From Schmidtea nova (taxonomy: Eukaryota): DNA of 64,000 nucleotides. Location: contig CM097882.1 in the NCBI GenBank assembly GCA_044892505.1, positions 68,882,001-68,946,000 on the forward strand, read 5' to 3'. Shown piece after piece: positions 57,176 through 58,934 of this stretch. The translations under genes and the position numbers were made by a program. How positions within the stretch are numbered: the stretch's first letter is position 1; each line of letters opens with the position of its first letter. Below the pieces are notes generated by a model. The model worked only from the letters and a program-made list of their open reading frames with translations, had not been told where the DNA came from and did not search any database.

Positions 57176-57893
57176 CGTAAATACAAAAATATAAAATTAA
57201 TTTATTTTCTGAAACAACTGGACATTGACATAAACAAGACTAGTAAAGATGATAAATCAAGACTAGAAGAGCTATAAGTATAAAGATCAAATCGTAATTA
57301 CTGATAAAGTATAACGGATGCGTATAAAATCTAAAAATTATATAAGTAGATACTAATTAATACAATAGATCTTGAAATAGAATTTTCGATGGAATAATTG
57401 TGTAATTGAGCGCAGTGTTTCAAATGTGCAGTGGTAAGCGGTGCAGTGGTACAGTTAGATAGTGGGAATTAAAGTGGTTAGTACACATGAGATGGTGTGA
57501 GATTGAGTGTTGGTTAGTGAGGGTAGTAAATTTAGTCGGTGTGTGAGTAAGCGTGTTACCCTTAAAAGCGTGTTAATCTTAAAAATATAATATAATACTG
57601 TACTCGAGTTTTAGAACATTTTCAATTGGGAATTATGGACTTCGTTTTTAATCATTCTGTTGTTTATAAATATGAAAATATTTATAATATATTCTTAAAA
57701 AAAATATTTTTTTGTATAAAAATAAAAGAATATTATATTTTTAAGATTAATTTATTTAAATTTAAAAATTTTTAATCGATATAAATTTTTTGACTATAAT
57801 AGAATTTAAAATATATATATTTTTTAAAAATTAATACTAATTTGTTCGAATAAATCGATTTATTTGATTTGTATTTGAATGTGAGATTGGGTA

Positions 57894-57934
57894 GCACCTG
57901 ATGAAGAGAATTAAGTTCTCGAAATATATTGTGC
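57894..57934 (+). ncRNA. Minimal type I hammerhead ribozyme, copy 1
   Basis: Stem I GCAC/GTGC; core CTGATGA plus an extra A; stem II GAGAA-TTAAG-TTCTC; GAAA; palindromic stem III (ATATAT); NUH = AUU; predicted cleavage after 57930. Confidence 0.75.
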
Positions 57935-58737
57935 AAAATATATATTTGGATTGGCGTTTGTTGTTAATTATATTAGTGCCATGCTGGTTGTGTTATGTAT
58001 TAAAGAAAGATAATAATCCGTCAGTTGTTCCGGTATTCTGTGAAAGTTTGTCTAGGAAAATGTTTGTATATAATTTTTATAATTCTAAATGTATAGAGCT
58101 TTATATTGTCGAATTAGTATTTCGATTTAATGATAAGGTTTACACTTGTGCTGATTCCTTCTCTTATTCTATTGTTTATGAATTAATTGATGTGATTGTT
58201 GGCGATTCTAAGTTTTCTGTATTGTTCTTTGCTCTGTTCTCGTTTATATTTTCAAACGTCATGGGTGAAATGCCACATACATTGGAAAAGACTGCCCGTC
58301 TTCTCTGTATTCGAGTTTCAGAGCGGAGTCAATTAATGGGATTTAGCGTTGCTTTCAGTCATATCGTTGTTTGTGAATATGTGAGTTTGAGAGTTTTGAG
58401 TCCGTGTGTTTGCCTCATTTTTTGCGGTTTAAGTAAATTAACTGATGTGGTTGTCGATGGTGTTTATTTTCTTCTTTTGATTTGTGTTCTATACTCGTTT
58501 AATTTTTCAAATGTCATGGGCGTAATGCCACATACTTTGGACAAGACTGACCGTCTTTTCTGTACTCGAGTTTTAGAACATTTTCAATTGGGGATTATGG
58601 ACTTCGTTTTTAATCCTTCTGTTGTTTATAAATATGAAAATATTTATAATATATTCTTAAAAAAAATATTTTTTTGTATAAAAATAAAAGAATATTATAT
58701 TTTTAAGATTAATTTATTTAAATTTAAAAATTTTTAA
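57901..58737 (+). CDS. 278-aa hydrophobic, predicted multi-pass membrane protein of unknown family with an internal repeat
   Basis: Stop-free 837-nt frame in AT-rich DNA; repeats FSNVMGEMPHTLEKTARLLCIRV / FSNVMGVMPHTLDKTDRLFCTRV with several third-position differences; opposite-strand frames have many stops. Confidence 0.5.
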   Translation: MKRIKFSKYIVQNIYLDWRLLLIILVPCWLCYVLKKDNNPSVVPVFCESLSRKMFVYNFYNSKCIELYIVELVFRFNDKVYTCADSFSYSIVYELIDVIVGDSKFSVLFFALFSFIFSNVMGEMPHTLEKTARLLCIRVSERSQLMGFSVAFSHIVVCEYVSLRVLSPCVCLIFCGLSKLTDVVVDGVYFLLLICVLYSFNFSNVMGVMPHTLDKTDRLFCTRVLEHFQLGIMDFVFNPSVVYKYENIYNIFLKKIFFCIKIKEYYIFKINLFKFKNF

Positions 58738-58856
58738 TCGATATAAATTTTTTGACTATAATAGAATTTAAAATATATATTTTATTTTAAAAATTAATAC
58801 TAATTTGTTCGAATAAATCGATTTATTTGATTTGTATTTGGATGTAAGATTGGGTA

Positions 58857-58897
58857 GCACCTGATGAAGAGAATTAAGTTCTCGAAATATATTGTGC
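58857..58897 (+). ncRNA. Minimal type I hammerhead ribozyme, copy 2
   Basis: Identical to copy 1 over GCAC...GTGC; predicted cleavage after 58893. Confidence 0.75.
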
Positions 58898-58934
58898 ACA
58901 ATATATATTTGGATTGGCGTTTGTTGTTAATTAT

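What the first reader, a model, noticed from the sequence alone, without database searches (positions are those of the whole stretch)
57598..58934. Tandem hammerhead ribozymes bounding a 963-nt protein-coding unit: candidate endogenous circular-RNA element
Seen: two identical minimal type I hammerheads 963 nt apart, inside ~375-bp direct repeats. The first repeat starts in the middle of sequence that precedes the second, so the locus is about 1.4 copies of one unit rather than two independent insertions. Established: minimal hammerheads with a palindromic stem III occur in Penelope-like element pLTRs and non-LTR retrozymes, work as dimers between tandem copies, and release monomers that can circularise. 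Known metazoan retrozymes are generally shorter and non-coding. Inference: this locus is a reverse-transcribed copy of a self-cleaving ~963-nt RNA that carries its own ORF but no RT or endonuclease, i.e. a coding retrozyme or viroid-like element mobilised in trans.
Basis: partly seen in the sequence, partly recalled or inferred. Interest (0 to 1): 0.85.

Follow-up and report, generated by a model that had tools for sequence, protein, structure and literature searches.

The report
Penelope-type hammerhead mini-element with ORF
A 1.3-kb stretch holds 1.4 head-to-tail copies of a 963-base mobile element that carries the small self-cutting RNA motif typical of Penelope-like retrotransposons, lacks their enzymes, folds into an unusually stable RNA, and keeps an open 278-codon reading frame whose protein matches nothing known.

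Summary
Two identical minimal type I hammerhead motifs lie 963 nt apart, inside 375/376-nt direct repeats that are 98% identical. The locus is 1.39 copies of one unit and is flanked by the same 4 bases (AATA).

The motif has the hallmarks published for Penelope-like-element (PLE) hammerheads, although Rfam models miss it. The layout matches a characterised PLE:
- the start codon lies in the ribozyme core;
- the predicted cut falls 30 nt after the start codon;
- the element ends 72 nt into the ORF.

The unit has no RT or endonuclease.

Two results are new:
- The + strand RNA is exceptionally structured (z -6.3, against -2.9 for the minus strand; 71% paired).
- Two paralogous hairpins of about 240 nt keep their pairing through compensatory changes.

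The 278-codon frame is open well beyond chance: 0 stops, against 21 and 30 in the other + frames. However, it has no homologue among billions of proteins, no confident fold, and dN/dS of about 0.8 between its two internal repeats.

Best reading: a non-autonomous PLE derivative of the animal "non-LTR retrozyme" class, copied in trans. Coding function and circular RNA remain untested. No other copy could be found with the collections available.

The parts
57594..57597 (.). Upstream copy of the 4-bp putative target-site duplication (AATA)
   Evidence: It is identical to 58936-58939 and lies directly outside the repeat ends. The chance of a 4-nt match in this AT-rich DNA is about 1-3% (my estimate).
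57598..57972 (+). Upstream, 5'-truncated partial copy: the last 375 nt of the unit, a pseudo-LTR
   Evidence: 98% identical to 58560-58935.
57894..57934 (+). Hammerhead motif, copy 1 (minimal type I); predicted cut after 57930
   Evidence: Its features match the PLE min-HHR hallmarks in PMC4209133.
57901..58737 (+). 278-codon open reading frame. It starts at the AUG in the hammerhead core, crosses the copy junction and ends inside the downstream repeat.
   Evidence: The frame has 0 stops, against 21 and 30 in the other + frames and 13-20 in the minus frames. No shuffle reached this length. It has no homologue, family or confident fold.
57973..58935 (+). One full 963-nt unit (963 = 3 x 321)
57973..58559 (+). 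Single-copy internal part of the unit. It is G+U-rich and A/C-poor on the + strand and has no RT or endonuclease similarity.
   Evidence: Composition; Pfam negative.
58159..58393 (+). Long RNA hairpin 1 (first 255-nt internal repeat)
   Evidence: The + strand has z -5.0 and the minus strand z -1.3.
58433..58629 (+). Long RNA hairpin 2 (second internal repeat, offset 255 nt = 85 codons). It runs into the downstream repeat.
   Evidence: The two repeats are 73% identical. They share 61 pairs, 9 of them changed on both sides. The pairing of one copy is kept in the other at 67/88 and 67/89 pairs, against about 53 +/- 4 expected (p 0.0002 and 0.0018).
58560..58935 (+). Downstream pseudo-LTR, the end of the full copy
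58857..58897 (+). Hammerhead motif, copy 2; predicted cut after 58893. The unit ends 42 nt further on.
58887..58906 (.). Perfect 20-nt palindrome covering helix III, the cut site and the 3' strand of helix I. The copy-1 equivalent, 57924-57943, has one mismatch.
   Evidence: Self-match; sequence. It could compete with the active fold or help pair two copies (inference).
58936..58939 (.). Downstream copy of the putative target-site duplication (AATA)

Best explanation
This is a non-autonomous derivative of a Penelope-like retroelement. In the newer terminology it is an animal 'non-LTR retrozyme'-class element.

Shown:
- A 963-nt unit is present as a 5'-truncated copy followed by a full copy, so its last 375 nt act as pseudo-LTRs.
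- Each pseudo-LTR holds a PLE-type minimal type I hammerhead near its 3' end.
- The unit lacks RT and GIY-YIG endonuclease.
- Its + strand RNA is very compact, with two paralogous long hairpins whose pairing has been conserved.
- A 278-codon frame starts at the AUG in the ribozyme core.

Inferred:
- A transcript longer than one unit was made from a parent copy.
- A PLE RT/endonuclease made elsewhere in the genome recognised the region around the ribozyme and ORF start, and nicked AT-rich DNA.
- It began copying inside the RNA, at the point that is now the element's 3' end (72 nt into the ORF), and ran on past one unit length.
- That produced the 1.39-unit insert with 4-bp flanking duplications.

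The hammerhead probably acts weakly, in pairs or with protein help, as in other PLEs.

The hairpins are the part most clearly under selection. They are likely RNA-level features for stability or protein binding.

The ORF is either a real small hydrophobic protein, or a frame kept open for translation-linked reasons. I put about one chance in three on a functional protein.
For: Architecture:
- Searches give the repeats, the 1.39 units, the sharp ends and the identical AATA flanks.

The motif carries the four features that Cervera & de la Pena list as emergent hallmarks of PLE min-HHRs:
- a G10.1-C11.1 pair;
- a palindromic helix III and loop;
- a short helix I and a long helix II.
These are from PMC4209133, checked against the sequence and the descriptor.

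The layout equals the Anolis PLE 'PAc':
- There the ORF starts at stem II, the cut is 26 nt after the start codon, and reverse transcription starts inside the first ~110-120 nt of the ORF (PMC11167929).
- Here the figures are 30 nt and 72 nt.

Background from the literature:
- Partial tandems, pseudo-LTRs and AT-rich or (TA)n targets are typical of PLEs, and non-autonomous PLE derivatives with pseudo-LTRs are known (PMC8557442).
- Retrozyme families of 51-972 bp are related to PLE pLTRs.

Other results:
- No RT or endonuclease in the unit.
- Strand-specific RNA structure.
- Conserved pairing in the two hairpins.
- ORF, hammerhead and structure all lie on the + strand.
Against: - Only this one locus could be examined. 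No second copy lies in the window.
- No relative was found in the viral or metagenome collections.
- No autonomous PLE lies in the 64 kb.
- The two hammerheads are identical by descent, so there is no covariation support for the ribozyme itself.
- Rfam models do not score the motif.
- PLE min-HHRs cut poorly in vitro.
- A 4-bp flank match in AT-rich DNA is weak evidence.
- A long intact ORF is not a feature of described retrozymes.
- The source organism could not be named, so the presence of PLEs in it is unverified.
Confidence: 0.7

Rival explanations
1. One-off dead remnant. A single autonomous PLE copy lost its RT/endonuclease region by internal deletion or rearrangement at this locus. The ORF is what is left of, or was fused to, the PLE ORF. 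There is no propagating family.
For: Only one locus was seen. The first 24 codons lie in the pseudo-LTR, where a PLE ORF would start. The insertion is young, with 1.6% repeat divergence, so an inherited open frame need not have decayed yet.
Against: - No similarity to any PLE protein or RT among 1.84 billion representatives or in Pfam.
- The internal part consists of two diverged (27%) hairpin repeats whose pairing has been kept. That implies long-term selection on this RNA, not a recent accident.
- The protein is hydrophobic and poor in charged residues.
Confidence: 0.12
2. Endogenised copy of an exogenous protein-coding viroid-like RNA. The RNA would be an Obelisk-, zeta- or deltavirus-like circle of about 1 kb, reverse-transcribed by a host retroelement.
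For: The unit is about 1 kb, has a hammerhead, is highly paired (71%; z -6.3) and has one long ORF. Coding circular RNAs of this size are known (abstracts).
Against: - The ribozyme is the PLE minimal type, and the ORF start and 3' end follow the PLE layout.
- There is no ribozyme on the other strand.
- The protein I had in mind (Oblin-1 or delta antigen) did not come back from any search.
- Base composition matches the surrounding host DNA.
Confidence: 0.06
3. Chance hammerhead-like motif inside an ordinary local tandem duplication of non-mobile DNA or of an orphan host gene.
For: Rfam is negative. The motif is short, and genome-wide some chance matches are expected. The thermodynamic z-scores of the motif alone are unremarkable.
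Against: - None of 400 shuffled windows contains such a motif.
- Features not needed for a chance match are present: the extra nucleotide, the G-C closing pair and the palindromic loop.
- The motif sits where PLEs have it relative to the ORF start and the element end.
- The flanks are identical, and strand-specific structure lies on the same strand.
Confidence: 0.06
4. Plant-type LTR retrozyme or TRIM-like miniature LTR retrotransposon, with true LTRs of about 375 bp.
For: Two ~375-bp direct repeats each carry a hammerhead. The span between ribozymes falls in the 600-1000 nt range of plant retrozyme RNAs. The flanking duplication is 4 bp.
Against: - The hammerhead is type I, not type III.
- The repeat ends are not of the usual LTR kind.
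- No purine-rich tract precedes the downstream repeat (5 of 15 purines), and no tRNA-end complement abuts the upstream repeat.
- Both the ORF and the second hairpin run straight across the repeat boundaries. The boundaries are therefore arbitrary cut points in a permuted unit.
Confidence: 0.03

Closest known systems
Pseudo-LTR hammerheads of Penelope-like elements (min-HHRs; Cervera & de la Pena 2014, PMC4209133), with the Anolis Poseidon element PAc (Frangieh et al. 2024, PMC11167929)
   Same: - Minimal type I hammerhead with short helix I, long helix II, an unpaired nucleotide after position 9, a G-C closing pair and a palindromic mini helix III.
- The ribozyme lies near the 3' end of a pseudo-LTR in a partial tandem.
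- The ORF starts in the ribozyme and the cut site is about 26-30 nt after the AUG.
- The element's 3' end lies inside the first ~70-120 nt of the ORF.
- The target is AT-rich.
   Different: - The ORF here is 278 codons with no RT, no GIY-YIG domain and no similarity to PLE proteins.
- The body is 0.6 kb of structured RNA instead of about 3 kb of coding sequence.
Animal non-LTR retrozymes (Cervera & de la Pena 2020, PMC7229834; Li et al. 2026 preprint 10.64898/2026.07.22.740005)
   Same: - Non-autonomous, AT-rich, head-to-tail units with type I hammerheads.
- No PBS or PPT.
- Compact RNA.
- Unit length within the reported 51-972 bp range.
- Proposed dependence on PLEs.
   Different: - Described retrozymes are non-coding, and mostly carry canonical hammerheads with loop-loop contacts.
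- They often occur in arrays of many units.
- This one has a minimal hammerhead, 1.39 units, a 4-bp rather than a longer flank duplication, and a long open frame.
Non-autonomous Chlamys PLE derivatives such as MRC1 (Craig et al. 2021, PMC8557442)
   Same: Short elements without RT that still form pseudo-LTRs and head-to-tail insertions and depend on an autonomous PLE.
   Different: Those are from green algae, mostly lack canonical hammerheads and are not reported to carry an ORF. No sequence relation was tested here.
Plant LTR retrozymes (Cervera et al. 2016, PMC4918200)
   Same: Two ~350-bp repeats, each with a hammerhead; a 600-1000-nt RNA between cut sites; 4-bp duplications; highly structured RNA.
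   Different: Those have type III hammerheads and true LTRs with PBS and PPT, are non-coding, and depend on Ty3/gypsy elements.
Protein-coding viroid-like circles (Obelisks, zeta-like and deltavirus-like RNAs)
   Same: A highly paired RNA of about 1 kb with a self-cleaving ribozyme and one ORF.
   Different: Those are RNA replicons without a DNA stage. Many have ribozymes in both polarities. No protein similarity was found here.

Membership tests
Hammerhead ribozyme, type I, PLE-type minimal variant | Conserved core boxes and a non-G residue at the cleavage position | tested here: met
   The core box is at 57898-57904, GAA at 57921-57923 and U17 at 57930. Copy 2 is identical.
Hammerhead ribozyme, type I, PLE-type minimal variant | Three helices around the core, with helix I open and helices II and III closed | tested here: met
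   Helices I (4 bp) and II (5-6 bp) are in the minimum-energy fold of the 47-52-nt segment. Helix III is 1 bp plus a palindromic loop.
Hammerhead ribozyme, type I, PLE-type minimal variant | [quoted passage not shown] | tested here: met
   All are present. The list of hallmarks comes from PMC4209133.
Hammerhead ribozyme, type I, PLE-type minimal variant | Match to a curated covariance model (Rfam hammerhead families) | tested here: not met
   No hit at gathering score or at E <= 10. Min-HHRs also escaped canonical descriptors in the original work.
Hammerhead ribozyme, type I, PLE-type minimal variant | Helices supported by compensatory changes among copies; self-cleavage | not testable with these tools
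   Only two copies exist, and they are identical by descent. No relatives were retrievable.
Autonomous Penelope-like element | A single ORF with a telomerase-like RT and a GIY-YIG endonuclease | tested here: not met
   The only ORF has no Pfam match even at E <= 10 and no homologue.
Autonomous Penelope-like element | Partial-tandem insertion forming pseudo-LTRs, a hammerhead in the pseudo-LTR, and an ORF start at the ribozyme | tested here: met
   compared.
Animal non-LTR retrozyme / non-autonomous PLE derivative | Head-to-tail units with a type I hammerhead, no RT or endonuclease, no PBS or PPT | tested here: met
Animal non-LTR retrozyme / non-autonomous PLE derivative | Compact, highly base-paired RNA on the ribozyme strand | tested here: met
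   z -6.3 on the + strand against -2.9 on the minus strand; 71% paired.
Animal non-LTR retrozyme / non-autonomous PLE derivative | Non-coding | tested here: not met
   The 278-codon frame is open far beyond chance. Whether it is translated is unknown.
Animal non-LTR retrozyme / non-autonomous PLE derivative | A multi-copy family in the genome; pseudo-LTR related to a resident autonomous PLE; circular RNA | not testable with these tools
   No eukaryotic genome or transcriptome collection was searchable by DNA. The window holds one locus.
Plant-type LTR retrozyme | Type III hammerhead; PBS after the 5' LTR and PPT before the 3' LTR | tested here: not met
   The topology is type I. There are 5 of 15 purines before the downstream repeat and no tRNA-end complement next to the upstream repeat. 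This was a simple reading, not a search against a tRNA set.
Coding viroid-like RNA replicons | A protein related to a known replicon protein; ribozymes of both polarities | tested here: not met
   No named hit in PDB, Pfam, PHROGs or the protein collections. There is no minus-strand ribozyme.

The most novel reading that the evidence does not exclude
The 278-codon frame is a real gene of a hammerhead retro-element. The predicted cut falls 30 nt after its AUG, exactly on a codon boundary. The complete frame therefore exists only on uncleaved multimeric RNA or on a re-ligated circle. If translated, this would be the first protein-coding retrozyme-type RNA encoded in a eukaryotic genome, with a protein laid over two conserved RNA hairpins.
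Probability: 0.17. Interest if true: 0.8.

Novelty: new variant of a known kind. Interest (0 to 1): 0.5.

Why it matters
Hammerhead-bearing PLE derivatives and retrozymes are described as non-coding. What the PLE hammerhead does is still open.

This locus joins three things in one small unit:
- the exact PLE ribozyme and ORF-start layout;
- an RNA body with measurable structural conservation;
- an orphan frame that is open beyond chance.

If a family of such units exists, two questions become directly testable from sequence and expression data. One is whether retrozyme-class RNAs can be translated. The other is what the RNA features recognised by PLE enzymes look like.

If it is a single dead copy, it is an ordinary transposon remnant.

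Tried and rejected
- **Rfam 15.** Run on the whole window at gathering score and on 57300-59200 at E <= 10. It gave no ribozyme, only a chance snoRNA-like hit.
- **Protein searches with the ORF.** All empty: exact look-up, 5.8-billion word-indexed search, 1.84-billion full HMMER search with no length filter, Pfam at E <= 10, PHROGs and PDB sequences.
- **AlphaFold2.** Without an alignment the model had pLDDT 38.7, too poor for a fold search, so none was run.
- **DNA pattern scans.** The viral collection gave nothing for the hammerhead or for the conserved hairpin apex. The metagenome collection gave one hit, L001, a chance match inside a bacterial coding sequence. A back-translated search of the viral collection was empty.
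- **Covariance model of the two hairpin repeats (R1).** It was used only for searching. It found no further copy in the window. Its match over the upstream flank 57488-57597 is full of non-pairs and rests on the repeat part, so I reject it.
- **Upstream G/T-rich block.** It is not significantly structured (z -1.1) and not similar to the unit.
- **Source organism.** It could not be named. The named polymerase relatives, at about 30% identity, are arthropods.
- **LTR-retrozyme reading.** Rejected.
- **Test for selection since the internal duplication.** Both repeats would stay open under neutral change with probability about 0.07-0.10. This is suggestive only.
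Full report
**1. Observation**

The sequence is as described. Two direct repeats, 57598-57972 and 58560-58935, are 375 and 376 nt long. They differ by six substitutions and one single-base indel. Similarity ends abruptly on both sides.

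The first repeat corresponds to the last 375 nt of a 963-nt unit (57973-58935). The locus is therefore 1338 nt, or 1.39 units. The four bases just outside each end are the same: AATA at 57594-57597 and 58936-58939.

A 37-nt stretch containing the hammerhead occurs exactly twice in the 64 kb, with none expected by chance.

**2. The ribozyme motif**

Reading, the motif has these parts:
- a 4-bp helix I (57894-57897 with 57931-57934);
- the core box (57898-57904);
- one unpaired A (57905);
- a 5-6-bp helix II closed by a G-C pair (57906-57920);
- GAA (57921-57923);
- a one-pair helix III around a 4-nt palindromic loop (57924-57929);
- U17 (57930).

Helices I and II appear in the minimum-energy fold of the isolated segment. 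Its energy is not unusual for its composition.

Rfam's covariance models do not report it, even at E <= 10.

The motif does carry each feature that Cervera and de la Pena listed as emergent hallmarks of the minimal hammerheads of Penelope-like elements (PMC4209133):
- the G10.1-C11.1 pair;
- a palindromic helix III and loop 3;
- a short helix I and a long helix II.

A descriptor I wrote with these features finds only the two flagged loci in the window and none in 400 composition-preserving shuffles. It was written after seeing the motif, so this bounds the chance rate per window and is not an unbiased test. The two copies are identical by descent and give no covariation evidence.

**3. Layout compared with a characterised PLE**

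In the Anolis Poseidon element PAc (PMC11167929):
- the ORF begins at stem II of the hammerhead;
- the cut site is 26 nt after the start codon;
- reverse transcription starts inside the RNA, about 111-118 nt into the ORF, which explains where genomic copies end.

Here:
- the AUG is the last three bases but one of the core box;
- the cut is 30 nt after it, on a codon boundary;
- the unit ends 72 nt into the ORF, 42 nt past the cut.

Several features are typical of PLEs (PMC8557442):
- partial tandems that create pseudo-LTRs;
- hammerheads near the 3' end;
- AT-rich or (TA)n targets;
- non-autonomous derivatives with pseudo-LTRs.

A 2026 preprint reports animal non-LTR retrozyme families of 51-972 bp and relates them to PLE pseudo-LTRs. 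The unit contains no RT or endonuclease.

I therefore read the locus as a non-autonomous PLE derivative inserted as a partial tandem by enzymes supplied in trans. The partial tandem does not by itself call for a circular template.

**4. RNA structure (new)**

The 963-nt monomer between cut sites gives these values:

| Form | Minimum free energy (kcal/mol) | Shuffle mean +/- sd | z |
|---|---|---|---|
| + strand, linear | -241.1 | -187.3 +/- 8.6 | -6.3 |
| Minus strand, linear | -133.4 | -115.7 +/- 6.2 | -2.9 |
| + strand, circular | -236 | not computed | not computed |

In the circular fold 71% of bases are paired, and 67 of 343 pairs are G-U.

The signal comes mainly from two long hairpins at about 58159-58393 and 58433-58629. 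They are + strand specific: z -5.0 and -3.5, against -1.3 and -2.8 on the minus strand.

The hairpins are paralogues. They are 73% identical and offset by 255 nt.
- RNAalifold finds 61 shared pairs, nine of them changed on both sides.
- The structure predicted from one copy alone is kept in the other at 67 of 88 and 67 of 89 pairs.
- Randomly placed substitutions of the same kind would keep about 53 +/- 4 (p 0.0002 and 0.0018).

This is the clearest sign of selection in the element, and it acts on RNA.

**5. The open reading frame**

The frame 57901-58737 (278 codons) has no stop. The other two + frames have 21 and 30 stops over the same span, and the minus frames have 13-20. No shuffle out of 4000 reached its length. 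Outside recognised transposon genes and N-run artefacts it is the only long frame in the window.

Some details are consistent with coding:
- G is enriched at first codon positions.
- Both the unit length and the internal repeat offset are multiples of three.

Several results argue against a constrained protein:
- There is no homologue in any collection.
- The fold prediction is poor.
- The composition is hydrophobic and driven by T-richness.
- Differences between the two internal repeats are spread evenly over codon positions (18/26/21), and dN/dS is about 0.8. RNA-structure constraint on synonymous sites may inflate that ratio.
- The chance that both repeats stayed open under neutral change is about 0.07-0.10.

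My conclusion is that the openness is real and protein function is unproven. Cleavage would separate the AUG from the rest of the frame. The same is true of the genuine PLE ORF in PAc, so this is not evidence for translation from a circle.

**6. Alternatives**

- *Plant-type LTR retrozyme.* The fit is poor. The hammerhead is type I, there is no polypurine tract or tRNA-end complement, and the ORF and second hairpin run across the repeat boundaries.
- *Endogenised coding viroid-like RNA.* The PLE-specific ribozyme and layout disfavour it. So do the lack of a minus-strand ribozyme and of any protein match, and the host-like composition.
- *Chance motif in a local duplication.* and the co-oriented RNA structure disfavour it.
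- *One-off deletion remnant.* This cannot be excluded without the genome.

**7. Limits**

- No DNA collection of eukaryotic genomes was available.
- All protein-based routes to other copies were empty.
- The organism could not be named.
- Family size, a partner PLE, transcription, cleavage and circularity are untested.
- The 1.39-unit count could understate a longer array if the assembly collapsed repeats.

**8. Conduct**

- Model R1 is a profile of the two internal repeats as they stand, and it was used only to search the window. Consensus lines printed by tools were not used.
- N-runs were left alone.
These were a tRNA primer-binding-type motif, a canonical hammerhead example and an insect telomere unit. 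In the descriptor I also used the generic core with a free position 7 before I had read it in PMC8557442. None of the recalled motifs was entered in a tool as a query or used as evidence.

Noticed in passing
window 41503-44718 (+): A protein-primed family-B DNA polymerase gene of a Maverick/Polinton-type element (PF03175 plus an Endonuclease_7-like stretch). Relatives are 1,100-1,270 aa. Here the frame is interrupted once by an in-frame stop. The best relatives (51-58% identity) are unnamed ENA contigs, and the named ones (about 30%) are arthropods.
   Followed up: partly
window about 27500-32500 (-) and 15400-17600 (-): Ty3/gypsy-type LTR retroelement genes. One set has protease, RT, RNase H and integrase, with the pol frame split once by a frameshift, plus a DUF7041 ORF. 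A separate gag-protease ORF carries three zinc knuckles, and its best relative is 55% identical.
   Followed up: partly
window 58941-59483: A tandem repeat with a 206-bp period, about 2.6 copies at 93-97% identity, starts directly after the element's 3' end. The first unit's start resembles the junction sequence. The element may have landed at the edge of this minisatellite.
   Followed up: partly
window 57573-57593 versus 57730-57750 and 58692-58712: An exact 21-nt inverted match lies between the DNA just upstream of the insert and the AT-rich part of the pseudo-LTR. PLE insertions often carry an inverted truncated copy upstream, but no longer similarity is present here.
   Followed up: partly
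window 57395-57572: A G/T-rich, C-poor block, unique in the window, lies just upstream of the insert. It is not significantly structured (z -1.1) and not related to the unit. Its origin is unknown.
   Followed up: partly
window 56279-56354, 57104-57174, 60066-60130: Long (AT)n microsatellites bracket the region. (TA)n is a reported preferred target of some PLEs.
   Followed up: no
window 6035-6478, 22627-22812, 24458-24697, 33402-33555, 34143-34276, 47071-47198, 53720-54583: Runs of N. They create artefactual long 'ORFs', for example around 5943-6524 and 53665-54703. They were left unfilled.
   Followed up: no
window 58243-58303 and 58498-58558: The apex of each hairpin, two small stem-loops, is the best conserved part of the internal repeats at 83-90% identity. 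It is a candidate protein-binding site.
   Followed up: no
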